From positions 310,001 through 374,000 of IMG/VR virus record IMGVR_UViG_3300049215_000771: DNA of 64,000 nt; one strand, written 5' to 3'. Of this stretch, positions 49,405 to 64,000 are shown in pieces. A program made the position numbers and the translations under genes. Position 1 is the stretch's first letter; each line of letters starts with the position of its first letter. The notes under the pieces are model-generated. The model did no database searches and had not been told where the DNA came from. It worked only from the letters and a program-made list of their open reading frames with translations.

Positions 49405-50670
49405 ATGATGAACCCAAACGAAGTCCACGAGGTAATGCGTGAGTATACCATCGGGGATGGAGAGCATATTGTAATCGACAGGGACCGTAGCTTGGGTTCA
49501 TACATGGCTGATGCTCGCACGGGTCGTCGCTACTTAGACTGCGCTTCGCAATTCGCCAGTCAGCCCCTTGGTTGGAACCATCACAAACTCAACGATAAAT
49601 GGAACTACCTGGGCCGGGCCGCAGTTCACAAATACGCCAACTCGGACTTCTACAGCACCGACCTCGCCGAGTTCGTTTTGGAATTCGCCAACATTACTCC
49701 CGACTTCAAATACCACTTCTTCATCGAAGGCGGCACCCTTGGCGTAGAGAATGCCCTCAAAGCAGCCTTCGACTGGAAAGCGCAAAAGCTGGGATTGTCG
49801 GAAGAACAAGCCAACGACCTGGATGTGATTCACTTCAAGCAAGCCTTCCACGGACGCAGTGGCTACACGCTCTCCCTTACCAACACCACGCCCAACAAAA
49901 CAGCGCTATTTCCGAAGTTCAAATGGACCAGGGTACTCAACCCAAAGATTCACTTCCCGATGGTAATTGAAGATGTGTTGGCTGCCGAGAAGGAAAGCAT
50001 CTATCAGATACTCACAGGCATAACTCGCAACTGCAAGAAAACAGCAGCTATTGTTGTCGAAAGCATCCAGGCCGAGGGCGGCGACAACCACTTCCGCCCG
50101 GAGTTCTTCAGGGAACTGCGCAAGATCGCCGATGCCCATGATGTCATGCTCATCATGGACGAAGTACAAACAGGGCTGGGACTCACGGGACAATTCTGGT
50201 GCTACCAGCATTACGGCATGGTGCCCGATATGATTTGCTTCGGGAAGAAAACGCAGGTGTGCGGTTTTTGTTCTACGGAGCGAATCGACGAAGTTGAAAA
50301 CAACGTGTTCCACGTTTCCAGTCGAATCAACTCGACATGGGGCGGCAACATCGTTGACATGGTTCGGGCTAAATACATCATCGACATCATCCTTGAAGAT
50401 GGTCTGACTGCTAATGCAGCAAACGTAGGAAGATTGTTCCTCAATAAACTTCAGAATATCCCAAGGATTACCAATGTGCGAGGGCGGGGCTTGTTCCTCG
50501 CCTTCGACTTGGAATCAGATGCAAGTCGCAACGACGTGCTGCATCTGATGAGCGATAAAATGATAGCGATGAAATGTGGGGAGCGCTCCATACGACTACG
50601 GCCCCACCTGACGTTCTCGGATGAGGACGCTGATGAGGCCGTGAAAATCATTACCGAAGCTGTAGTTTAG
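49405..50670 (+). CDS. lat: L-lysine 6-transaminase (class III PLP aminotransferase)
   Basis: FHGRSGYTLSLTNT, QAEGGDNHFR, DEVQTG, FGKKTQVCG, SRINSTWGGN. Confidence 0.92.
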   Translation: MMNPNEVHEVMREYTIGDGEHIVIDRDRSLGSYMADARTGRRYLDCASQFASQPLGWNHHKLNDKWNYLGRAAVHKYANSDFYSTDLAEFVLEFANITPDFKYHFFIEGGTLGVENALKAAFDWKAQKLGLSEEQANDLDVIHFKQAFHGRSGYTLSLTNTTPNKTALFPKFKWTRVLNPKIHFPMVIEDVLAAEKESIYQILTGITRNCKKTAAIVVESIQAEGGDNHFRPEFFRELRKIADAHDVMLIMDEVQTGLGLTGQFWCYQHYGMVPDMICFGKKTQVCGFCSTERIDEVENNVFHVSSRINSTWGGNIVDMVRAKYIIDIILEDGLTANAANVGRLFLNKLQNIPRITNVRGRGLFLAFDLESDASRNDVLHLMSDKMIAMKCGERSIRLRPHLTFSDEDADEAVKIITEAVV

Positions 50671-52493
50671 GCCCAAGTCCTGGGTCGCTTGTCTTTCCTG
50701 TAGGGCTTCAAAATCGACTCAAAGAAATCTTTGTCGCCACGATAAATTGTGTGATCCCTGCTGGTGTTCATATCGTTGCGATGTTGCTGCGCAAGGATGG
50801 CGGCAATCTTTTCGTGCTTTTGTTGATCGTTCAGGTTTTGATCCCTGTGAATCTTGGTGATCTCTGCCTTGGCGTCATCACTGATGCTCTTGTCCTGGAT
50901 GCCGCCGTTATCTATCGCCCAACGTAGTTTTCCGACATCTTCGGGACTCCAATCATTTGTAGTATCTGGTGCCGGTTGCGTACCGCCATTGGTTGTCGCA
51001 CCCGTCGAACCTGGGGCGGCGGGCGGCAATTTCCAAATACCACGCTGCCGCCAATCATCGAGTTTCTTTTCCATGTCATCAACCGAATTGATGCTGGAAG
51101 CCCATTGAGCAAGTTTATTTTTGGGAGCGTTATCCCAAATAATTCGAGCCAATTCTTTGCTATATTGCTGCGGATTGCCCCCATGTTTTTGCGCTAACTG
51201 AACTACAAAATCATTCAGTTTTTTCCCTTCTGGAGTTTCAAGATTCTTCATCTTGGCTTCGTCCTCCTCCGTACTGAGTTGCTGCGCAATAGCATGTCCA
51301 GGAGTGGATTGTGATTGCGCCCCAGGAGTGGATTGTGATTGCGCTGATGTATCTGGCCCGCCGATTGCTTTCATGATGGACTGAACATGCTTCATGAAGT
51401 CGGGGCCAAAATGTTGCAATTGCTGCTGATTATGCAGCAAAGCGGTCAACGCTTGGATGGCCTGGTTCTTGGCGTCTGTTTGAATTCCTTGTGCGGCCCT
51501 ATTCCAACCAGCACCGAATCCGCCCTGGCCGAATATGTTGCTGACACCACCCCACAATTTCTTACCCCAATCCCATTCGCTGATAACATCCTGGAACTCA
51601 TCAGGAGTAAGATACCGACCCTGCTTGATGTACCAATTGGCAAATGCCGCTGGATCGTGGCCGGTTTCGGCGAGCCTGTTACAAAGACGACGAATCTTCT
51701 GCTCAATCAACACATGCTGCAAGAACGGATTTTCTTGTGGGTTGTAATGCGATTTCTGAACCTGTGGTGCTGCTTGTGGTGCTTGTGGTGGTGCTTGTGG
51801 TGCTTGTGGTACTTGTTGTGGTGCTTGTGGTGGTGCTTGTGGTGGTGCTTGTGGTGCCGCTTGTGGCGGATTCTGCAACATGCCAATTACTGCATGAAGT
51901 GATCCGACAAAGGCTTGATTGTTTTTCAAATCATCGGGCAATTTCCCCGAAAGATTCTGCAACGCTTGCATGGCGTTACTGATTACACCTTGAATGGCCT
52001 GGTTCTGTTGTGGAGCCTGTCCAGCGGCACCTTGTTGCCCACCAGCTTGCCCGCCTCCCGCTTGCCCAGCGGGTTGACCAGAAGCATCTTGTCCTCCACC
52101 AAGGCCGAGGCCCGCTTTAGCGCCGCCCAACAAATGCCCACCTGCTGTGCCCAATGCACCACGAATAGCCCCACCACCAAGAGCCATAGCAGCACCGGGA
52201 ACAGCAGCAAGATGGCCGGCACCCGTCCCAACAGCCTGTCCTAACTGAGCAAAATTATCGTAGTTGACGTTTTTCTTCCACCAGTCGAGGACACGATTTT
52301 CGACCAGTAGCAATTCTTGCTGAAGCCATTGTTTGGATTGTTCGGGTGCATCTTCCTTGTAGAGAATGCCTTCCGTGGCAAACCACTCGACGAATTTGCG
52401 AGGGTTTACGCCACGGGAGGCCATCAAGGTGAAGGCTGTTTCAGCTAGATTATTCAGCCGTCGAGAGCCGATGTGTTGGGCAAAAGACCGCAT
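50667..52493 (-). CDS. Large Gln/Gly/Ala/Pro-rich protein, putative internal virion protein
   Basis: MRSFAQH leader; duplicated domain; low-complexity repeats. Confidence 0.65.
   Translation of the reverse strand: MRSFAQHIGSRRLNNLAETAFTLMASRGVNPRKFVEWFATEGILYKEDAPEQSKQWLQQELLLVENRVLDWWKKNVNYDNFAQLGQAVGTGAGHLAAVPGAAMALGGGAIRGALGTAGGHLLGGAKAGLGLGGGQDASGQPAGQAGGGQAGGQQGAAGQAPQQNQAIQGVISNAMQALQNLSGKLPDDLKNNQAFVGSLHAVIGMLQNPPQAAPQAPPQAPPQAPQQVPQAPQAPPQAPQAAPQVQKSHYNPQENPFLQHVLIEQKIRRLCNRLAETGHDPAAFANWYIKQGRYLTPDEFQDVISEWDWGKKLWGGVSNIFGQGGFGAGWNRAAQGIQTDAKNQAIQALTALLHNQQQLQHFGPDFMKHVQSIMKAIGGPDTSAQSQSTPGAQSQSTPGHAIAQQLSTEEDEAKMKNLETPEGKKLNDFVVQLAQKHGGNPQQYSKELARIIWDNAPKNKLAQWASSINSVDDMEKKLDDWRQRGIWKLPPAAPGSTGATTNGGTQPAPDTTNDWSPEDVGKLRWAIDNGGIQDKSISDDAKAEITKIHRDQNLNDQQKHEKIAAILAQQHRNDMNTSRDHTIYRGDKDFFESILKPYRKDKRPRTWA
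51298..51344. repeat. 24-bp tandem repeat (AQSQSTPG x2)
   Basis: ccaggagtggattgtgattgcgc twice. Confidence 0.85.
51763..51866. repeat. Coding low-complexity repeat (PQA/PPQA)n
   Basis: (g)gtgcttgtg array. Confidence 0.85.
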
Positions 52494-53283
52494 TCTGTTC
52501 TCCTACTGGTTCGTAATACTTCAGGCGTAGCGTAGCGAACGCCATAACCGGCATTTTTTCCTTTCGGTTATATACGAACCCCAATGCGTTATTTAGCCCG
52601 TCGTCCCAGGTTTTGAACCAAGACATCGGAACGTAGTAAGAACGACTAAAAATCGGTGGAGCAAATGGCGCAGGCGGGACACGGTATCTAACAGCAACGC
52701 CGATGACCTCGTTGTGTTTGTTGAAAAGCGGCCCTCCTGAATCTCCAGGAAGAATACAACAAGAAGTACGAATGAGTCCCTTGTTCATTGCCGGCGTTCT
52801 GGTGTATACTCCTGTGATCTTTCCATCATCAAAACAAGGGTCATCGGCCATAGCAAAACCAACTCTTTTCACAGGTTCGCCAAACTTCAATTGGTAACTG
52901 AACAAAGCAAGTTTCGCTACCTCCAGCCTATCTTTGCTTTCAAACAAAACAACAGCTAAATCTTTTTCTTGGCTGTGGGCGTAAACCGTGGCCGGGTAGC
53001 GAGTGAAACCCATCAATTTGCCATTTTTGTCATAGCTCATGACGTACACAGAAAATTCACTACTTTCAGCGGTGATGTGTTGACAAGTGATAGCGACGTT
53101 ACGATATTTTTCTCCGACAAGTTCAGACCTAACAACGAAGGCAGTGCCGTGTCCTCCTTCATTATCTACCAGCTTAACAACTGGCTTGAGGGTTTGCCTC
53201 AGTAGTTTTTCGGGAGCATCGCCACTAAATACTGGTGAAGTTGAGAGCAATAGCAAGAAGCTGCAAGCAAGATATTTCAACAT
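52450..53283 (-). CDS. Secreted trypsin-like serine protease (S1)
   Basis: Signal peptide; GTAFVV, TCQH, DLAVV, PGDSGGPL. Confidence 0.85.
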   Translation of the reverse strand: MLKYLACSFLLLLSTSPVFSGDAPEKLLRQTLKPVVKLVDNEGGHGTAFVVRSELVGEKYRNVAITCQHITAESSEFSVYVMSYDKNGKLMGFTRYPATVYAHSQEKDLAVVLFESKDRLEVAKLALFSYQLKFGEPVKRVGFAMADDPCFDDGKITGVYTRTPAMNKGLIRTSCCILPGDSGGPLFNKHNEVIGVAVRYRVPPAPFAPPIFSRSYYVPMSWFKTWDDGLNNALGFVYNRKEKMPVMAFATLRLKYYEPVGEQNAVFCPTHRLSTAE

Positions 53284-53668: not shown

Positions 53669-54934
53669 ATGGGGATGTTAGAAGAAGCAAAAAAGCAGCT
53701 TGATGCTGCGGCCCAATATGCAGAAATCGACCCTGAAAGTTGGGAAAGACTTCAATATCCGCAAAAAACCCTAAATGTCGTAATCCCAATGCGACATGAT
53801 GACGGAACGCTGAAGATGTATAAAGCGTACCGTTGCCAATACGACACAACGCTCGGCCCGGCGAAGGGAGGTATTCGTTACCATCCCAACGTCTGTCGGG
53901 ATCACTGCGAGGCGTTGGCGTTCTGGATGACATTCAAATGCGCTGCCTTGAAGCTCCCCTTCGGGGGAGCCAAAGGCGGCATTTGTGTTGACGCCACGAA
54001 ACTTTCACATCGAGAGTTGGAGCGTCTGAGCAAATCATACATCATTGCCTTCGCCGACTTCATCGGTCCCGACGAAGACATCCCTGCTCCTGATCTATAC
54101 ACAGATGAAAGGATCATGGGCTGGATGTACCAACAATATCGCCAGATCAAAGGCGGGCACCCGAAAGACATCGTAACCGGCAAACCAACGGCTTTGGGTG
54201 GAATCGAGGGGCGAAATTCGGCGACAGGTTACGGCGGGTACTACTGCCTGGAAACGATATTGAACTCAAATATGGGTCCGCCCAATATCCCTCCCAATCT
54301 CGACGATATTCGAGTTGCCATCCAGGGCTTCGGCAAAGTGGGATATTGGTTTGCCGAGAAATGTTTCCGACAAGGGTTGAAAGTCGTCGCCCTCAGCAAT
54401 GAGTTCGGCGGCTGCTACTGCGAACACGGCATCAATGTCGCCGCCGCTCGCAAATGCCTGGATGAGAGTGGAGGCAAGGAGTGGGGGCAGGGAGACAAGC
54501 TAACCAACGATGAACTCCTTCAAATGAACGTGGATTTGTTGGTTCCTGCCGCCATTGAGAATGTGTTGACCAAAGATAATGCTGGCAAGGTGCAAGCAAA
54601 GATGATTTTGGAATTGGCGAACGGCCCTACTACAAATGAGGCCGACGCCATTTTGAATGACAAAGGGGTATTTGTCATTCCCGACATCCTGGCGAACGCC
54701 GGGGGAGTCGTTGTTTCTTACTTCGAGTGGCTTCAGAACAGGACGGCTCGCAACTGGACTTTGGAGCAGGTAGATGATGACTTGAAGAAGATGATGGACT
54801 ATGCCACAGAAAAAACTCTGGCCTACAAAGTGAAGCACAAAATCTCGGCCAGAACAGCGGCATATGTACTGGCCTTGAGGCGAATCAATGCGGCCAACGC
54901 CTGTCTTGGGAACAAAGGTTATTTTCAGCGTTGA
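53669..54934 (+). CDS. gdhA: Glu/Leu/Phe/Val dehydrogenase (glutamate dehydrogenase)
   Basis: GPAKGGIRYHP, GGAKGG, DIPAPD, QGFGKVG, ANGPTT, PDILANAGGVVVSYFEW. Confidence 0.95.
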   Translation: MGMLEEAKKQLDAAAQYAEIDPESWERLQYPQKTLNVVIPMRHDDGTLKMYKAYRCQYDTTLGPAKGGIRYHPNVCRDHCEALAFWMTFKCAALKLPFGGAKGGICVDATKLSHRELERLSKSYIIAFADFIGPDEDIPAPDLYTDERIMGWMYQQYRQIKGGHPKDIVTGKPTALGGIEGRNSATGYGGYYCLETILNSNMGPPNIPPNLDDIRVAIQGFGKVGYWFAEKCFRQGLKVVALSNEFGGCYCEHGINVAAARKCLDESGGKEWGQGDKLTNDELLQMNVDLLVPAAIENVLTKDNAGKVQAKMILELANGPTTNEADAILNDKGVFVIPDILANAGGVVVSYFEWLQNRTARNWTLEQVDDDLKKMMDYATEKTLAYKVKHKISARTAAYVLALRRINAANACLGNKGYFQR

Positions 54935-57275: not shown

Positions 57276-58160
57276 ATGTCTATTCAACCCAATTACCCAC
57301 TGTTCGACCCGGCATTCAACGCCAGTGTTACGGGTGAAAGCTACGAGAACCCGACGAACACGGTCTACACTCCTCCGGTGCTAGGTACTGGCAACCCCGA
57401 TCCTGTGTATGACCCTGCGTTCGCCGAATATGTAGAAGGAACTCCGTATGAGGACGCTCCCAATGGTCCCGCCATTGTTCCTTACTACAGCCCGGACTAC
57501 AACCAGAAGAAAACAGGTAACGCCTACCAGACGCAGGGTACGGTTTACAATCAGCCGCCAGCCCAGCCTTCGGCACAGCCAACTGGCGTGTACGGACCAG
57601 CGTTTTTCAGTGCCAACTTGCATCAGTCCTACCAGGCAGCAGGCCAGCAGTATAACACTGTAACTGGTCAGTCTACGGGCGACCCGGACCCGGTGTATGG
57701 CCCGGCATTCGCTGCGGCTGCTACGCAGCAGTCGTACCAGCCGGATGGTCAGGTAAACGACAGCCAGGTTGTCAGCCCGGTCATTACCTTCCAGGTCAAT
57801 CTGCTCAATCCGTTGCTTCCAGGTGGAGATTTGCCGCCTAACAGGACCAGCTTGGATGGAAACGAAATTGTTTCGGAAGCGAACAACCAATTGGCTACAA
57901 GGACCGTTTGGTTCCCGGATATGGTCGTCAACAGCGACGGCAGCACTGGTGGTTCACCGGCTGTTGAAGGTATTGGTGGAATTTTCGCCGGACAAAATGG
58001 CAACGGGCAAAACGGCGCAAGCTACAACCACCCGCAGGGCTACCTGCATCACGGTTCGCTATTCACTGTCAAGGGGCAAAGGGCTATGTACTTGAAGAAC
58101 CTCTTCGTGTCGAATCCGCCAGCACCGGCTGATTTACTCATCGTTGTTTCTCAGTCGTAA
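57276..58160 (+). CDS. Putative structural protein with PVY[DG]PAF repeats
   Basis: AAGGAG RBS; PLFDPAF, DPVYDPAF, GVYGPAF, DPVYGPAF. Confidence 0.65.
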   Translation: MSIQPNYPLFDPAFNASVTGESYENPTNTVYTPPVLGTGNPDPVYDPAFAEYVEGTPYEDAPNGPAIVPYYSPDYNQKKTGNAYQTQGTVYNQPPAQPSAQPTGVYGPAFFSANLHQSYQAAGQQYNTVTGQSTGDPDPVYGPAFAAAATQQSYQPDGQVNDSQVVSPVITFQVNLLNPLLPGGDLPPNRTSLDGNEIVSEANNQLATRTVWFPDMVVNSDGSTGGSPAVEGIGGIFAGQNGNGQNGASYNHPQGYLHHGSLFTVKGQRAMYLKNLFVSNPPAPADLLIVVSQS

Positions 58161-59369: not shown

Positions 59370-61391
59370 ATGGCAGAAGAAGAAAGAATTGTAAACCGCA
59401 ATACCAGGCAATCCTACCATGACAAAATCAAGGCAGCGTTGGCAAAAAAACCAACTTCCGCTATGATAAACAATCGTGCGATGCCAGTGCAAGAACTGAA
59501 CAAGATAATTACCAACCAAACACCGACCGTCGAGCCGGTGCAACCAGTTCAGCGTCGAGTCATAAGAAATGTAAGAAAGAAAAGGGCTATGGAACGCCGT
59601 CCGGCAACAGCCATAATGCCCTACACAGAAGCGAAAAGTGATCCGGCCCCTATGCCAGAAGCCTATCTCTACAGTGTGCCAGAATGGTTCACACCAAAAA
59701 CGAAACCGAAAATTTCGGTAATCATTCCGTTGTTCAAAAGCAACGCTGTAGTGACCGATCAAATCAAAACGTGGATTCATGAGAAAGACATTGACGTAGA
59801 AATCATCTATGTCGATGACAACTGCCCCACCAACTCCAAAGCCACTGTACTGAAGGCGTGGGAAGATCGTGGCGAGAAGAAACCAGTAGGTAAAATCGTA
59901 GCAAACCGTGAGAATGTGGGCTACGGACGAGCGTGCAACGTCGGGGCACTTCATGCTAGTGGCGATTATCTTATCTTCCTCAACTCAGATACCAAAGTTA
60001 CTGAGGGGTGGATCAAACCTATGCTCGATTTGTTCGACAACCCCAAAGTAGGGATCGTCGGCAACTTGCATCTGAAGGAAGGTGGGCCGCACCACAACAC
60101 TGTGGACAGTGCTGGTTCTGCCTGGAACTGGTCAAGCATGTATTTTGAACACATCGGGCGGCATCATTACAAAGGCGCTCACCTATCCCAACCCTTCGCT
60201 TATCCAAACCTACCAGAAGACCTGCGTGGCGTCAGCGAACGTGAGATGGTAACTGGTTGTTGCTTCATGACTCCCGCCAAAGTGTTCAATGAAGTAGATG
60301 GTTTCGATCCGAGGTATCGAATCGGGTATTGGGAAGATTCGGACTTGTGCATGAAAGTCCGAGAATTAGGTTACAAGATTTTGTTTCAACCAAGGAGCAT
60401 CATATGGCACAAGTTGTCACACTCTGGAGCGGCGGGCCACGCTCACTACCGAGAAAACACAGACTTCTTCCGCAATCGTTGGTACAACAGCGGGAGAGTG
60501 GACAAACTCCTGTTCACGCCAAGGCCAGGCGGTCCTCCCGTGGTCAAAAACATCCTGGTCAAACGAATTGCGGCCAACGGAGATGTGCTGATGGCAACAT
60601 CAATCCTTCCGGCCCTCAAGAAGAAATGGCCTAAAGCAACGATTACTTTCTGGACGGGATGTGAACAAATTTTGTTTGGGCACCCAATGATCGACAAGAT
60701 CGTATCGTTCAATCCCAAGCAACAGTTCGATTACGTCGTCAACCTCGATCTTGCTTACGAGTATCACCCAACCTGGTCCATTCTCAAAAGCTATGCTTTC
60801 GAGGCCGGTGTTCCAGTTGAAGATTGCAAAGCGTACATGGCTACTAAACCATTGCGTTGGCAACTTCCCAAACCCTACATCGTAATGCACGCCAAGCGAG
60901 AAGAAGGATTTGGTTGGGCTGGGCGCAACTGGAAGGGAGATCGCTTCACTGACATCGCCGACCGGCTGCGGAAAGAAGGACACAACATTGTCCTAGTCGG
61001 CGGGCCTGGAGATTGGCAGTTGCCCCACGACCTAGACCTGCGTGGCCGGACAAATCCACAAGAACTTGCAGCAATCATGAAGGATGCCAGCTTCTTTGTC
61101 GGGATGGATTCCATGCCAATGCACATGGCACAAATTTTTGGCGTCCCTGGCGTCGTATTCTTTGGGAGCATATTGCCAAAATACAGGCTAACAGGAAGTA
61201 GGCTTCACCCGATCAATGCAACGCACCTGGACTGTCTTGGGTGTCACCACAAATCCAAACCACCCTCGATAGGAACGAGTTCATGCGCCAGGGGCGATTT
61301 CGCTTGTGAATATGACATCACTGTTGATATGTTCTGGAACAAAATCAAGGAAGTAATGAACGGTAAGAAAACATGGCTACCAGTGGTATGA
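59370..61391 (+). CDS. Fused GT2 + GT9 (heptosyltransferase-like) glycosyltransferase
   Basis: ISVIIP, VDD, N.GY..ACN, FLNSD, EDSDLC (GT2); GDVLMAT..L.ALK, GMDS.PMH.A...GVP.V..FG (GT9). Confidence 0.9.
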   Translation: MAEEERIVNRNTRQSYHDKIKAALAKKPTSAMINNRAMPVQELNKIITNQTPTVEPVQPVQRRVIRNVRKKRAMERRPATAIMPYTEAKSDPAPMPEAYLYSVPEWFTPKTKPKISVIIPLFKSNAVVTDQIKTWIHEKDIDVEIIYVDDNCPTNSKATVLKAWEDRGEKKPVGKIVANRENVGYGRACNVGALHASGDYLIFLNSDTKVTEGWIKPMLDLFDNPKVGIVGNLHLKEGGPHHNTVDSAGSAWNWSSMYFEHIGRHHYKGAHLSQPFAYPNLPEDLRGVSEREMVTGCCFMTPAKVFNEVDGFDPRYRIGYWEDSDLCMKVRELGYKILFQPRSIIWHKLSHSGAAGHAHYRENTDFFRNRWYNSGRVDKLLFTPRPGGPPVVKNILVKRIAANGDVLMATSILPALKKKWPKATITFWTGCEQILFGHPMIDKIVSFNPKQQFDYVVNLDLAYEYHPTWSILKSYAFEAGVPVEDCKAYMATKPLRWQLPKPYIVMHAKREEGFGWAGRNWKGDRFTDIADRLRKEGHNIVLVGGPGDWQLPHDLDLRGRTNPQELAAIMKDASFFVGMDSMPMHMAQIFGVPGVVFFGSILPKYRLTGSRLHPINATHLDCLGCHHKSKPPSIGTSSCARGDFACEYDITVDMFWNKIKEVMNGKKTWLPVV

Positions 61392-61635
61392 TTGTTGCCG
61401 CCGTGACTCCACCACGATGCGGTCAAGTCGGACAATCTCCGTTCCGCTGATGGAGCAGGCATTCACCCCTTCTGGCTCTCAGCACCTACAAACGAAGAAG
61501 CGTTCTTGAAGCACGGCGACAACAATCAAAGCGTTTCAAGAACGCATGGCAAGTTGTTGGGTTTTCATGTGAACTCCTGATTTCAGCCCACCCACCCTAT
61601 ATACGAGTGTCCGATTCAACACAAGGAGGAGAATC

Positions 61636-61887
61636 ATGACGAACTTTTGGAACTGGTTGATGGGCGTTCTTGGACTGGCACCAACAGTGCTGGCCGATGT
61701 CAAGCCAATCGTTGACGACGGCGAGGCTATTGTTGTCGCTCTGGAGAAAGTCATCAGCGACATTAAGACAAGGAACTTCACGTCTGTCGTCGCCGACACG
61801 CAGGCTCTCGCAACCGATGTTCAGACTTTCGCAACCGAAGTTCAGGCTGTAATCACTCAGATTCAGTCTAGCAACACCACCAAGTAA
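61636..61887 (+). CDS. Small amphipathic-helical protein
   Basis: AGGAGG RBS. Confidence 0.6.
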   Translation: MTNFWNWLMGVLGLAPTVLADVKPIVDDGEAIVVALEKVISDIKTRNFTSVVADTQALATDVQTFATEVQAVITQIQSSNTTK

Positions 61888-61898
61888 ATAGCTGCCTT

Positions 61899-62351
61899 AT
61901 GGCTGCAACGAAACGTAAATTAACAGCGTTAGACATTAACGCCATACTGAAGAAACTGGACGATTACCTTGTTTCGCTACAGAAACAGTGGGACGCCCAA
62001 CCACATTCTCCATCTAGTTGGTGGAGACTGAACAGGGTGCGCTTCTCGCAAGGCGTCCAGTTCCTCATCGAATGCTTGGACAAGTTGGTTTTGTTCGTAG
62101 AGGACTTGATCCCGGCTGGTACGGATAAAAAAGCCGCCGTTATCTCGCTCCTGGACAAGTTGTTCGATTACGTTGTTACACCATGTTTACCGATCTGGCT
62201 GAAACCATTCGCCCCGATCATCAAAGACATCGTGATTAACTTCGTGATCTCCAGCATTATCGACTTGATTGTGTCCAAGTACAACAAAGGCATTTGGAAA
62301 AAGGATGTGACATATGCCAAGACGAAGACCTACTACCTCCCACGCAGATAA
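61899..62351 (+). CDS. Hypothetical helical protein (weak holin-like features)
   Basis: GTDKKAAVISLL, hydrophobic C-terminal helix; TAAATAG upstream. Confidence 0.55.
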   Translation: MAATKRKLTALDINAILKKLDDYLVSLQKQWDAQPHSPSSWWRLNRVRFSQGVQFLIECLDKLVLFVEDLIPAGTDKKAAVISLLDKLFDYVVTPCLPIWLKPFAPIIKDIVINFVISSIIDLIVSKYNKGIWKKDVTYAKTKTYYLPRR

Positions 62352-63285
62352 GTTTCATTGCAAACTCCTGCCGTATGTACGGGAAGACCTACTTACGATG
62401 CAGGATGTGCAAAAACAAGTTGGCTGGGAAATTACAGCTTTCAACTTGCCATTGGCCTGGAACTACTCGCAAGGCGAGGGCGTCAAAGTCGCCGTCATCG
62501 ACAGTGGTGCCGACCTAGACCACCATGACCTTGTAGAAAACCTGCTGCCCGGCAAAAACTTTGTCGATCCAACCAAGACCCCGGAGGACGACTGCGGCCA
62601 CGGTACGCACGTCACAGGCATCATCTGCGCTAAAAACACCGAGATGGGTATGGTGGGTGTTGCCCCGAAATGCAAAGTCATTCCGGTGAAGGCTTTGAAC
62701 AACAAGGGAGTCGGGGATTTGCGAAACGTCGCTGAGGCTATTCGCTGGTCAGCAGATCAGGGTGTAGACTTCATCACGATGTCGCTTGGCTCCCCCGCAC
62801 CACTTCAACAAGTACGCAAGGCTTTGCAGTATGCGGTATCGAAAGGTGTTGTGATTTTCTGTGCAGCCGGCAACGCTGGCACGACACGGGAGATTTTCTA
62901 CCCTGCGGCTTACCCGGAAGCAATTGGCGTAGGAGCAATTGACGAAAAATTCGAGCGTGCAAACTTCAGTTGCACAGGCAATGACCTGGACTTCCTGGCC
63001 CCTGGCGTCCGCATCCTGAGTACGGTCCCCGACAACTGGTACGCCGTGATGTCTGGTACAAGCCAGGCGAACCCGTTCCTGGTGGGCGTGGCAGCCCTGC
63101 TACTGTCCTACAAGCGGGCACGCAACCTGGACTTGAAGCTGGACACGAATGATGATTACTGCAATGCTTTGAAACAGTACACGATCCCGTTGGCCGATCC
63201 GCAATTTGCCGGCAACAGATTCTTCCAGGGCTTTGGAATCATTGATCCACGGAAGATGGAGGAGTGGGCGGCGGCGCACCAGTAA
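62314..63285 (+). CDS. S8 subtilase, intracellular serine protease (ISP) type
   Basis: VAVIDSG, GHGTHVTG, AAGN, SGTSQA.P; N-terminal LLPY; no signal peptide or prodomain. Confidence 0.92.
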   Translation: MPRRRPTTSHADKFHCKLLPYVREDLLTMQDVQKQVGWEITAFNLPLAWNYSQGEGVKVAVIDSGADLDHHDLVENLLPGKNFVDPTKTPEDDCGHGTHVTGIICAKNTEMGMVGVAPKCKVIPVKALNNKGVGDLRNVAEAIRWSADQGVDFITMSLGSPAPLQQVRKALQYAVSKGVVIFCAAGNAGTTREIFYPAAYPEAIGVGAIDEKFERANFSCTGNDLDFLAPGVRILSTVPDNWYAVMSGTSQANPFLVGVAALLLSYKRARNLDLKLDTNDDYCNALKQYTIPLADPQFAGNRFFQGFGIIDPRKMEEWAAAHQ

Positions 63286-63907
63286 GCTGGGCTTGAAGCG
63301 ATTCAATCTGCTTCTTCAGTGCCCCTGCTGCCTCGTAGTTTTCAATCTCAATGGCTTTCGCCATTTTCAGCCTGTAAGATTTGATGCGTTCCTCAATGGA
63401 AGCGTTCTGATCCACAGGCTGTTCTGTTTTTGGAACAGGCTTGTTGACTTTGGGCGACTTGCCGACATGCTGCGTGGCCCCTGCGTGGGAATGCTTGGCA
63501 ACTATCTTCAACTCCTCGCTGAAGTGTTCCCAGCACGTTGCGCAGCCAACCTTGCCATTCTCGGCAAGTTTTCTGACAGTCATGCCACATGATGGGCATG
63601 GCGGTTTGCCAGCGTTTCTAAGTTGAGATTTTGGTTGTTGGGGTTGTTGCATCGTTTTAGCCAACATAGCGCCAAGTAATGCGGTCAAGAAACTAGACAA
63701 TAAAGTGGGAGCAGGCGGCGCAGGAGGCGGCTGTGGGACCGCCTCCTGTTTTACCTGTTTCGTTGTTTCTGGAGCCATATCCATATATTTGGCAGAACAA
63801 TCCTTGCACAAATGCAACTCCACGAACGACCCATCTGGCTTCAGTTCTGTGATATGAGTCGTCCTGCGTTTTGGACAGGGCTGACCAGAAAACGGGCAGA
63901 GGTCCAT
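63239..63907 (-). CDS. mcsA: McsA-like protein (CxxC zinc motifs + UVR domain)
   Basis: HLCKDC, CPSCG...GKVGCATCWEHF, H.G...H.GK.P, AIEIENYEAAG.LK. Confidence 0.85.
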   Translation of the reverse strand: MDLCPFSGQPCPKRRTTHITELKPDGSFVELHLCKDCSAKYMDMAPETTKQVKQEAVPQPPPAPPAPTLLSSFLTALLGAMLAKTMQQPQQPKSQLRNAGKPPCPSCGMTVRKLAENGKVGCATCWEHFSEELKIVAKHSHAGATQHVGKSPKVNKPVPKTEQPVDQNASIEERIKSYRLKMAKAIEIENYEAAGALKKQIESLQAQLTGAPPPTPPSSVDQ

Positions 63908-64000
63908 TATTTTTTCCTTTCGATGAGATTGTTCTCATCGTTGAAATCACGGACTTCTTTCAAGTATAGCTCACGTTCCTTCTCAGGAATCTCATCCTTG
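63907..64000 (-). CDS. Partial CDS (3' end) coupled to mcsA-like gene
   Basis: Open frame ...KEVRDFNDENNLIERKK* with TAATG overlap. Confidence 0.5.
   Translation of the reverse strand, partial: KDEIPEKERELYLKEVRDFNDENNLIERKK

What the first reader, a model, noticed from the sequence alone, without database searches (positions are those of the whole stretch)
62314..63907. Phage McsA-like adaptor convergent with an ISP-type subtilase
Seen: McsA architecture (CxxC motifs, H.GK.P, C-terminal UVR coiled coil). The S8 protease lacks a signal peptide and prodomain and carries KLLPY, resembling the LIPY/F autoinhibitory motif of Bacillus intracellular subtilisins. Established: McsA activates the arginine kinase McsB, which marks proteins for ClpCP. 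No mcsB lies downstream in the window. Inference: the phage may redirect or jam host McsB/ClpC proteolysis and add its own cytoplasmic protease.
Basis: partly seen in the sequence, partly recalled or inferred. Interest (0 to 1): 0.7.

Follow-up and report, generated by a model that had tools for sequence, protein, structure and literature searches.

The report
Huge-phage McsA homologue beside intracellular subtilisin
A 533-kb phage from a moss metagenome carries a true homologue of McsA, the bacterial activator of the protein-arginine kinase McsB, but no kinase of its own. Next to it lies a very conserved intracellular-type subtilisin, so the phage probably interferes with its host's protein-degradation tagging, although the host is not known.

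Summary
Both genes are real. The ORF at 63239-63907 (-) is a true McsA homologue, not a generic UVR hit: it has two zinc domains, the H-V-G-K-S-P loop and a C-terminal coiled coil. It matches solved McsA chains, including the 59-residue fragment that binds McsB.

The ORF at 62314-63285 (+) is an S8 protease of the intracellular-subtilisin (ISP) type. It has no signal peptide or prodomain, an intact triad, and an LLPY motif that fits the ISP pattern.

The 532,729-bp phage genome has no McsB, ClpC N-domain or CtsR. It does encode ClpX and a ClpP-like protein.

Both genes mark a large clade of huge phages. The McsB-binding loop H-x-G-K-x-P is kept in 144 of 148 divergent viral representatives. 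A model docks the phage protein on a bacterial McsB at the known interface (0.82, best control 0.04).

Caveats:
- The host is unknown.
- A minority of lineages have lost the McsB-binding domain.
- The two genes occur apart, so a functional pairing is not shown.
- The conserved McsA tail is only an antisense by-product of the overlap with S8.

Most likely this is an orphan viral McsA acting on a host McsB-type kinase, next to an independent, self-inhibited cytoplasmic protease.

The parts
63239..63907 (-). McsA-like gene, 222 aa (Z1 - Pro-rich linker - Z2 - L3 loop - coiled coil)
   Evidence: NF053706 at 82.8 bits. PDB McsA chains 8wtb_B and 8gqd_E. The start at M1 is supported by the conserved N-terminus MDxCP in homologues, although one gene caller started at V29.
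63797..63898 (-). First zinc domain Z1 (C4-x6-C11 ... C34-x2-C37), viral type with a six-residue first spacer
   Evidence: C4, C34 and C37 are invariant in 22 sequences. The C-x6-C spacing is found in 123 of the 150 best cluster representatives. Bacterial McsA has C-x2-C.
63452..63598 (-). Second zinc domain Z2 plus L3 loop (C104..C125, H147-V-G-K-S-P152). This is the part that binds and activates McsB in B. subtilis.
   Evidence: It matches the 59-residue McsA fragment 8gqd_E at E 3.5e-9. Contact residues were mapped from PMC11046695. H-x-G-K-x-P is kept in 144 of 148 representatives. It forms the modelled interface, residues 106-154.
63287..63394 (-). C-terminal UVR-type coiled coil (residues 172-207)
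   Evidence: Pfam UVR at 20.8-24 bits. E189, E192, A194 and L204 are conserved.
63239..63285 (.). 47-nt overlap of the two 3' ends. The McsA-like tail PPTPPSSVDQ is the antisense reading of the S8 C-terminus IIDPRKMEEW.
   Evidence: Read directly from the sequence. The S8 C-terminus is conserved even where there is no overlap, and the tail is absent where the McsA-like gene stops earlier.
62314..63285 (+). ISP-type S8 serine protease, 323 aa. LLPY at residues 18-21 (62365-62376); triad D63, H96, S250; oxyanion N187.
   Evidence: Pfam at E 7.6e-48. Full-length alignment to intracellular subtilisins. L18, P20, D63, H96, N187 and S250 are invariant in 16 homologues. In the fold search, the ISP precursor 2x8j gives the longest alignments (324-330 columns) and the highest TM-score normalised to the query (0.73-0.75).
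61899..62351 (+). p150, a conserved viral protein of unknown function. Its 3' end overlaps the S8 start by 38 nt, so it is probably co-transcribed with S8.
   Evidence: 44-80% identical homologues sit upstream of S8 in related loci. It belongs to a virus-only family. RNA contigs cover it.
61636..61887 (+). p83, a small protein with a hydrophobic N-terminus; first gene of the p83-p150-S8 string
   Evidence: ORF list. It is the best covered part of the region in moss metatranscriptome contigs.
63907..64000 (-). 3' end of p209, a coiled-coil protein that runs off the window. Its stop overlaps the McsA-like start (TAATG). Further upstream lie p273 and the HTH protein p101.
   Evidence: The order p101-p273-(p209)-McsA-like is conserved in related loci and in LR756511.1.

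Best explanation
The minus-strand gene encodes an orphan viral McsA. The protein keeps the second zinc domain and the L3 loop, which in Bacillus McsA bind and switch on the protein-arginine kinase McsB. The phage has no kinase, so the protein most likely binds the host's McsB-type kinase during infection. It would then change which proteins are phosphorylated on arginine and so handed to ClpC-ClpP.

Because all three McsA modules are kept (Z1, Z2-L3, coiled coil), activation or re-targeting is somewhat more likely than simple blockade.

The plus-strand gene is a separate, much more conserved cytoplasmic subtilisin of the intracellular (ISP) type. It is made inactive with its LLPY propeptide lying over the active site and becomes active after N-terminal processing.

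Shown: homology, domain content, absence of the kinase in the phage, conservation, synteny.
Inferred: binding to a host kinase, direction of the effect, and propeptide inhibition of the protease.
For: - Homology to McsA over Z1, Z2, L3 and the coiled coil.
- Of 17 B. subtilis McsA residues that contact McsB (PMC11046695), nine are identical or conservative in the phage protein (numbering): C107, K119, G121, W126, H141, T145, H147, K150, K153.
- L3 is a loop whose only described role is McsB binding. It reads H-x-G-K-x-P in 144 of 148 divergent viral representatives.
- Docking on the McsB of the nearest named bacterial relative scored 0.82, against 0.04 for the best of 3 controls. That mark was reached by 51 of 78 solved complexes and 2 of 108 mismatched pairs. 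The runs agree in at least 66% of contacts and the partner's pLDDT is at least 61. The interface is phage residues 106-154 on McsB 34-43, 145-171 and 224-233, which are the three loops of the crystal interface.
- No McsB, Clp_N or CtsR in the 532,729-bp genome, and no McsB in LR756511.1.
- The gene next to it is not a hidden kinase: p273 folds as a phage tail-like beta protein.
- The nearest cellular homologue lies in an mcsA-mcsB-clpC operon.
- ISP features of the protease (PMC6220982).
- Precedent for a phage protein that modulates ClpCP: SPO1 gp53 (PMC6873191).
Against: - The host is unknown.
- McsB is rare: it was found in 1 of 14 control genomes.
- The only host hint is a related contig binned with a Chloracidobacterium MAG. 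It points to a phylum where 81 sampled genomes have no McsB and no McsA of their own.
- Five loci of two related lineages (L025, L030-L032, L034) keep only Z1 plus the coiled coil and have lost Z2-L3. At least there, the function does not need McsB activation.
- The docking pass may reflect memory of solved McsA-McsB complexes. It shows likeness, not binding.
- The score against the curated McsA model is well below its cut-off.
- No RNA contig covers the gene in four moss metatranscriptomes.
Confidence: 0.5

Rival explanations
1. The McsA-like protein works without McsB. Its constant parts, Z1 and the UVR-type coiled coil, dock on another partner. That partner could be the UVR-containing middle domain of a host ClpC-type unfoldase, the phage's own ClpX, or the tail-like and coiled-coil proteins encoded just upstream. 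The protein would then act as an assembly or targeting factor.
For: - Z1 and the coiled coil are the only parts kept in every form, including the 96-107-residue forms without Z2-L3.
- The gene is translationally coupled to p209 and always follows p273, even where S8 is not adjacent.
- UVR-domain proteins are enriched among ClpC1 interactors in chloroplasts, which have no McsB (PMC8889267).
- The phage encodes ClpX and a ClpP-like protein.
- McsB was not found in the one candidate host phylum.
Against: This reading does not explain the near-universal conservation of the L3 loop H-x-G-K-x-P and the Z2 contact residues, whose known role is McsB binding.
Confidence: 0.25
2. The McsA-like protein and the S8 protease are a functional pair. 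The zinc-finger protein would regulate the neighbouring protease or deliver substrates to it. Alternatively, the overlapping convergent transcripts would regulate each other by antisense pairing.
For: - The convergent arrangement, with 3' overlaps of 4 to 98 nt, recurs in about 30 related loci. It persists even where the McsA-like protein is only about 30-40% identical.
- No terminator-like site lies between the genes.
Against: - The whole block of about 15 genes is syntenic, so adjacency carries little weight.
- 54 of 80 IMG/VR loci with an S8 homologue have no detectable McsA-like ORF within 5 kb.
- LR756511.1 has the McsA-like gene but no S8 homologue, and locus L107 has no annotated S8.
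- Other genes can be inserted between the two.
- S8 is 57-90% identical where the McsA-like protein is 30-70%, so they evolve at very different rates.
- No complex prediction was run for this pair.
Confidence: 0.1
3. The McsA-like gene is a decaying passenger taken from a bacterium and has no current function.
For: Domain losses, length variation (96-282 aa) and fast divergence. A split gene in one locus.
Against: - The frame is open in every locus examined except the split one.
- All zinc ligands are invariant and motif conservation is strong across more than 140 representatives clustered at 50% identity.
- The position in the genome is conserved.
Confidence: 0.05

Closest known systems
McsA (protein-arginine kinase activator) of Bacillus subtilis and Staphylococcus aureus; PDB 8WTB/8WTC and 8GQD
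   Same: Same order of modules: Z1, Z2, L3 loop with H-x-G-K-x-P, then a UVR-type coiled coil. All eight zinc ligands are present. Nine of the 17 residues that contact McsB are identical or conservative. The modelled interface is the same.
   Different: - Encoded by a phage, with no mcsB, clpC or ctsR beside it or anywhere in the genome.
- The first cysteine pair is spaced by six residues, not two.
- A longer proline-rich linker joins Z1 and Z2.
- A C-terminal extension is overprinted on the neighbouring gene.
- The score against the curated McsA model is 82.8 bits against a cut-off of 210.
- Some relatives lack Z2-L3.
Intracellular subtilisin proteases (ISP) of Bacillus clausii, B. subtilis IspA and Planococcus; PDB 2X8J, 2WV7, 2XRM, 7Y6M, 7XR8
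   Same: S8 triad, no signal peptide, no classical prodomain, a short N-terminal propeptide carrying an [LVI]-[IFLV]-P-[YFH] motif, and a C-terminal extension. Among solved structures, only these align over nearly the whole length.
   Different: - About 33-35% identity only.
- 17 residues precede the motif instead of about 5, and a conserved Cys sits two residues before it.
- GTSQA replaces GTSMA in this copy.
- It is a phage core gene, kept at a mean column identity of 73%, and in some relatives it is interrupted by an intein.
- Dimerisation and propeptide inhibition were not tested.
SPO1 gp53, a phage-encoded adaptor-like protein that modulates ClpCP of B. subtilis (PMC6873191)
   Same: A phage protein proposed to redirect the host's ClpC-dependent proteolysis.
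   Different: The reports on gp53 describe it as acting on the ClpCP protease as an adaptor-like protein. The protein here is a homologue of the kinase activator and would act one step upstream.
UVR-domain ClpC interactors of chloroplasts (ClpF, UVR2-4, EXE1/2; PMC8889267)
   Same: Proteins with a UvrB/C-type coiled coil, some scored as McsA-like by domain searches, that associate with a ClpC unfoldase in a system lacking McsB.
   Different: They have different accompanying domains. No Z2-L3 module is reported for them, and they are not viral.

Membership tests
McsA (protein-arginine kinase activator) | Two four-cysteine zinc domains (Z1, Z2) | tested here: met
   C4, C11, C34, C37 and C104, C107, C122, C125. 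Seven of the eight ligand columns are invariant in the 22-sequence alignment. The second Z1 ligand (C11) is present in every sequence but is not scored invariant, because the bacterial C-x2-C spacing places it in a different column from the viral C-x6-C.
McsA (protein-arginine kinase activator) | Z2-L3 segment that binds the McsB kinase domain, with H-x-G-K-x-P | tested here: met
   Matches the 59-residue McsB-bound fragment 8gqd_E at E 3.5e-9. Nine of 17 contact residues are kept. The motif is kept in 144 of 148 viral representatives.
McsA (protein-arginine kinase activator) | C-terminal UVR-type coiled coil | tested here: met
   Pfam UVR on residues 172-207, 20.8 bits in hmmscan and 24 bits in the genome search. 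This is borderline but aligns with the coiled coil of 8wtb_B.
McsA (protein-arginine kinase activator) | Score above the curated equivalog cut-off of NCBIfam NF053706 | tested here: not met
   82.8 bits against a cut-off of 210; only model positions 51-175 are matched. It is therefore a homologue, not an equivalog.
McsA (protein-arginine kinase activator) | Encoded with mcsB (and usually clpC, ctsR) | tested here: not met
   No PF00217, PF02861 or PF05848 match in the 532,729-bp genome. The bacterial relative P0016 does sit in an mcsA-mcsB-clpC operon.
McsA (protein-arginine kinase activator) | Binds and activates McsB | tested here: inconclusive
   The docking model passes (0.82 against a best control of 0.04; 51 of 78 solved complexes and 2 of 108 mismatched pairs reach the mark). 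It may rest on memory of solved complexes, and it used a non-host kinase.
Intracellular subtilisin protease (ISP) | S8 catalytic triad and oxyanion Asn | tested here: met
   D63, H96, S250 and N187 are invariant in 16 homologues. Pfam at E 7.6e-48.
Intracellular subtilisin protease (ISP) | No signal peptide and no classical prodomain | tested here: met
   The longest hydrophobic run in the first 50 residues is 3. Only 62 residues precede the catalytic Asp.
Intracellular subtilisin protease (ISP) | N-terminal propeptide with the LIPY/F motif [LVI]-[IFLV]-P-[YFH] | tested here: met
   LLPY at residues 18-21 aligns with LIPY of 7y6m. L18 and P20 are invariant; the variants are LLPF, LLPH and LFPF. 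The pattern is from PMC6220982.
Intracellular subtilisin protease (ISP) | Propeptide lies over the active site and inhibits; dimer through the C-terminal arm | not testable with these tools
   The model has low confidence for residues 1-9 and 20-43, so the position of the propeptide cannot be read.

The most novel reading that the evidence does not exclude
A whole clade of 0.4-0.7-Mb phages carries an orphan McsA and uses it to take over the host's phosphoarginine tagging system. This would be the first viral manipulation of that degradation signal. The stranger variant is that the hosts have no McsB at all. In that case the strictly conserved Z2-L3 surface would bind a different, unknown partner, giving a new function for the McsA fold.
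Probability: 0.4. Interest if true: 0.75.

Novelty: new variant of a known kind. Interest (0 to 1): 0.6.

Why it matters
Phosphoarginine is the bacterial counterpart of a ubiquitin-like degradation mark, and no virus is known to interfere with it. Full-text searches for McsA and McsB together with phage found only the SPO1 gp53 work on ClpCP, and no report of a phage McsA.

The viral McsA family is large and shows a strictly conserved kinase-binding loop while no kinase was found in the two complete genomes searched. That gives a directly testable prediction: the hosts have McsB, and the phage protein changes its activity or its targets. It could also serve as a host-range marker for a clade of huge phages whose hosts are unknown.

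The neighbouring ISP-type protease is one of the most conserved genes of that clade and carries an intein in some members, so it is probably important for the infection cycle. Its substrates are unknown.

Tried and rejected
- **Conserved C-terminal tail.** I first took PPTPPSSxxQ of the viral McsA-like proteins for a docking motif. I rejected this: it is the antisense reading of the conserved S8 C-terminus within the 3' overlap, and it is missing where the gene stops earlier.
- **A hidden kinase upstream.** p273 is always next to the McsA-like gene and could have been a divergent McsB. Its confident model (pLDDT 93) resembles phage tail proteins and FliD-like beta domains instead. A profile search of the PDB gave nothing.
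- **Host identification** failed by four routes:
  - names of homologues;
  - glutamate dehydrogenase as a supposed host-derived gene, which turned out to be a clade-core phage gene;
  - a literature search;
  - a genome-collection scan, which gave only a binning hint to a Chloracidobacterium MAG.
- **Firmicute 'phage' hits.** The Staphylococcus and Listeria phage records cover only the Z2-to-coiled-coil half of the query, and I did not examine them further. One faecal 'Bacteriophage sp.' scaffold carries a plain mcsA-mcsB-clpC operon, so it is probably bacterial DNA. I did not count any of these as phage McsA.
- **S8 model.** It was of medium quality (pLDDT 71), and the N-terminal propeptide could not be placed.
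- **Not modelled.** No complex prediction was run for the McsA-like protein with S8, ClpC or ClpX, because the single job went to McsB.
Full report
**What is there.** The window is bases 310001-374000 of a 532,729-bp IMG/VR virus record. The record is labelled provirus and 100% complete, and the same proteins are recorded on a 673,178-bp contig. At the given coordinates there are two convergent ORFs. One is 62314..63285 (+), 323 aa. The other is 63239..63907 (-), 222 aa. Their 3' ends overlap by 47 nt.

**The McsA-like protein.**
- The curated NCBIfam McsA model matches residues 75-209 at 82.8 bits. This is a clear match but far below the equivalog cut-off of 210.
- Pfam sees only a borderline UVR motif.
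- Among solved structures, the only significant matches are McsA chains. B. subtilis McsA (8wtb_B) matches at E 6.7e-11, with a weak second stretch over the first zinc domain. The 59-residue S. aureus fragment solved on McsB (8gqd_E) matches residues 104-154 at E 3.5e-9.
- A 22-sequence alignment shows invariant zinc ligands and an invariant H147, G149 and K150.
- One correction to the observation: the first cysteine pair is C-x6-C, not CxxC.

**What the conserved part does in the model organism.** The crystal structure of B. subtilis McsA with the McsB kinase domain shows that Z2 and the following L3 loop bind McsB. Z2-L3 alone activates the kinase, while Z1 and the coiled coil reshape the oligomer (PMC11046695).
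- Using the alignment, phage numbering is B. subtilis numbering plus 23. On that mapping, nine of 17 listed contact residues are identical or conservative: C107, K119, G121, W126, H141, T145, H147, K150 and K153.
- A docking job used the McsB that sits next to the nearest named bacterial homologue, an Omnitrophica MAG with an mcsA-mcsB-clpC operon.
- It gave a score of 0.82, against 0.04 for the best of three controls. That mark was reached by 51 of 78 solved complexes and 2 of 108 mismatched pairs.
- The runs agree in at least 66% of contacts, and the partner's pLDDT is at least 61.
- The interface is phage residues 106-154 on McsB 34-43, 145-171 and 224-233. These are the three loops of the crystal interface.
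- As the tool warns, this may be memory of solved complexes. It shows that the surface is McsB-like, not that this copy binds.

**No kinase in the phage.** Six-frame searches of the whole genome find no ATP:guanido-phosphotransferase, no Clp N-domain and no CtsR.
- They do find a ClpX with its zinc-binding domain, a ClpP-like protein and a single S8 protease.
- The gene that always precedes the McsA-like gene, p273, could have been a hidden kinase. Its confident model (pLDDT 93) resembles phage tail proteins instead.

**The protease.**
- Pfam Peptidase_S8 matches at E 7.6e-48.
- Only intracellular subtilisins align from residue 14-17, through KLLPY, to about residue 303. Secreted subtilisins and thermitase start at residue 35-53.
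- In the fold search, the B. clausii ISP precursor gives the longest alignment and the highest TM-score normalised to the query.
- LLPY fits the published motif [LVI]-[IFLV]-P-[YFH], whose mutation relieves inhibition in a Planococcus ISP (PMC6220982).
- In 16 homologues L18, P20, D63, H96, N187 and S250 are invariant, and the mean column identity is 73%.
- There is no hydrophobic N-terminus.
The inhibitory position of the propeptide could not be checked, because the model is poor there.

**Distribution and linkage.**
- The protease family is very large. More than 120 clusters are at least 62% identical, on contigs of up to 602,679 bp.
- The McsA-like family is also large. A profile search found 6,381 proteins. 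Of the best 150 representatives at 50% clustering, 123 carry the viral C-x6-C Z1.
- Three divergent members that I looked up sit in the same syntenic block.
- That block reads: GT2/GT9 glycosyltransferase, p150, S8, then on the other strand McsA-like, (p209), p273 and the HTH protein p101, then a COOH-NH2 ligase, a hydrolase and Prim-Pol.
- The convergent, overlapping arrangement recurs in about 30 loci.
- But the two genes are separable:
  - 54 of 80 IMG/VR loci with a more distant S8 have no McsA-like ORF within 5 kb.
  - The 595-kb phage LR756511.1 has the McsA-like gene with p209, p273 and p101, but no S8 homologue and no McsB.
  - Another gene can sit between the two.
- S8 is 57-90% identical where the McsA-like protein is 30-70%.
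- On its own strand, the McsA-like start overlaps the stop of p209 (TAATG).
- I therefore treat the pairing as conserved synteny, with a functional link possible but unsupported.

**A trap.** The viral McsA-like proteins share a C-terminal tail, PPTPPSSxxQ, that bacterial McsA lacks. It lies exactly in the overlap and is the antisense reading of the S8 C-terminus IIDPRKMEEW. That C-terminus is conserved whether or not the genes overlap. The tail is an overprinted extension and is not independent evidence of function.

**Evidence that cuts against the kinase idea.**
- Five loci of two related lineages encode 96-107-residue forms with Z1 and the coiled coil only. No Z2-L3 is found anywhere nearby, and p273 is enlarged there.
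- The host is unknown.
- A related contig was binned into a Chloracidobacterium MAG. That MAG and 80 further sampled genomes of its phylum show no McsB. They show no McsA either, other than the phage contig itself.
- McsB was found in only 1 of the 14 control genomes.

**The argument on the other side.** L3 is a loop with no known role except binding McsB, yet it reads H-x-G-K-x-P in 144 of 148 viral representatives that are at most 50% identical to each other. That is hard to explain unless an McsB-like surface is still the partner in most lineages.

**Environment and expression.** The DNA is held by moss metagenome runs. Moss metatranscriptome contigs identical to the window cover 61628-62343 (p83, p150 and the first 30 nt of S8). 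They do not cover the body of S8 or the McsA-like gene. These are low-depth assembled contigs, so the gap proves nothing. It does show that the phage was present, and probably active, in those samples.

**Verdict.**
- The most likely reading, at about one in two, is an orphan viral McsA that engages a host McsB-type arginine kinase. Beside it lies an independent, self-inhibited cytoplasmic subtilisin that is a core gene of a large huge-phage clade.
- The main rival is an McsB-independent role of Z1 and the coiled coil, with ClpC, ClpX or the upstream operon products as partners.
- I found no report of a phage McsA in the searchable literature. The nearest precedent is SPO1 gp53 acting on ClpCP.
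- The finding is a new variant of a known kind. It is of moderate to good interest, and identifying the host is the decisive missing fact.

Noticed in passing
L008:8527-10770 (-) and L020:5883-8141 (-): In two related phages the S8 gene is interrupted by an intein of about 400 residues with homing-endonuclease domains. It is inserted one residue after the catalytic His (GHG|C...SN|THV). Inteins usually sit in conserved sites of important genes.
   Followed up: partly
window 63239-63285: Overprinting: the last 15 codons of the McsA-like gene are the antisense of the last 15 codons of S8. This produces an apparently conserved proline-rich tail.
   Followed up: yes
G000:C1:82884-84230 (+) and about 249745-250347 (-), outside the window: The phage encodes a full ClpX with its N-terminal zinc-binding domain (448 aa) and a ClpP-like protein of 200 aa. 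It may therefore have an unfoldase-protease pair of its own, or the ClpP-like protein may be a head-maturation protease.
   Followed up: partly
window 52450-53283 (-): A trypsin-like serine peptidase (Pfam Trypsin_2, E 1e-20). This is a third protease gene in the phage, and it is also present near the block in a relative (L107).
   Followed up: no
window 53669-54934 (+) and 49405-50670 (+): A glutamate dehydrogenase and a class-III aminotransferase. The dehydrogenase is not a recent host pick-up. It is a core gene of the clade, with more than 100 clusters at 64-88% identity on contigs of up to 693 kb.
   Followed up: partly
window 59370-61391 (+): A 673-aa fusion of a family-2 glycosyltransferase with a family-9 (heptosyltransferase-like) domain. 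It is conserved upstream of S8 throughout the clade, amid epimerase, deacetylase and methyltransferase genes.
   Followed up: no
L006:4558-5379 (-), i.e. genome 374558-375379, just past the window's end: p273 always lies directly upstream of the McsA-like gene. Its high-confidence model resembles phage tail and minor-tail proteins. In the lineages whose McsA-like protein lost Z2-L3, the p273 homologue is enlarged to 459-587 aa.
   Followed up: partly
window 57276-58160 (+): A 294-aa low-complexity protein with repeated P-V-Y-(D/G)-P-A-F-type motifs and no family match.
   Followed up: no
window 61628-62343: Moss metatranscriptome contigs identical to the window cover p83 and p150 but nothing further downstream. 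p83 has a hydrophobic N-terminus and a weak match to a head-fibre family.
   Followed up: partly
L015 (MT835711.1, 'Bacteriophage sp.' from human faeces): This record, filed as phage, carries a canonical mcsA-mcsB-clpC operon and is probably bacterial DNA. Short Staphylococcus and Listeria 'phage' records that match the C-terminal half of the query (Z2 to coiled coil) may be the same kind of thing.
   Followed up: partly
whole record G000: IMG/VR labels the 532,729-bp record a provirus, yet the same genes are recorded on a 673,178-bp contig. I could not examine whether the trimmed 140 kb is host DNA or a false host call on a gene-rich huge phage. If it is host DNA, it would identify the host.
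   Followed up: no
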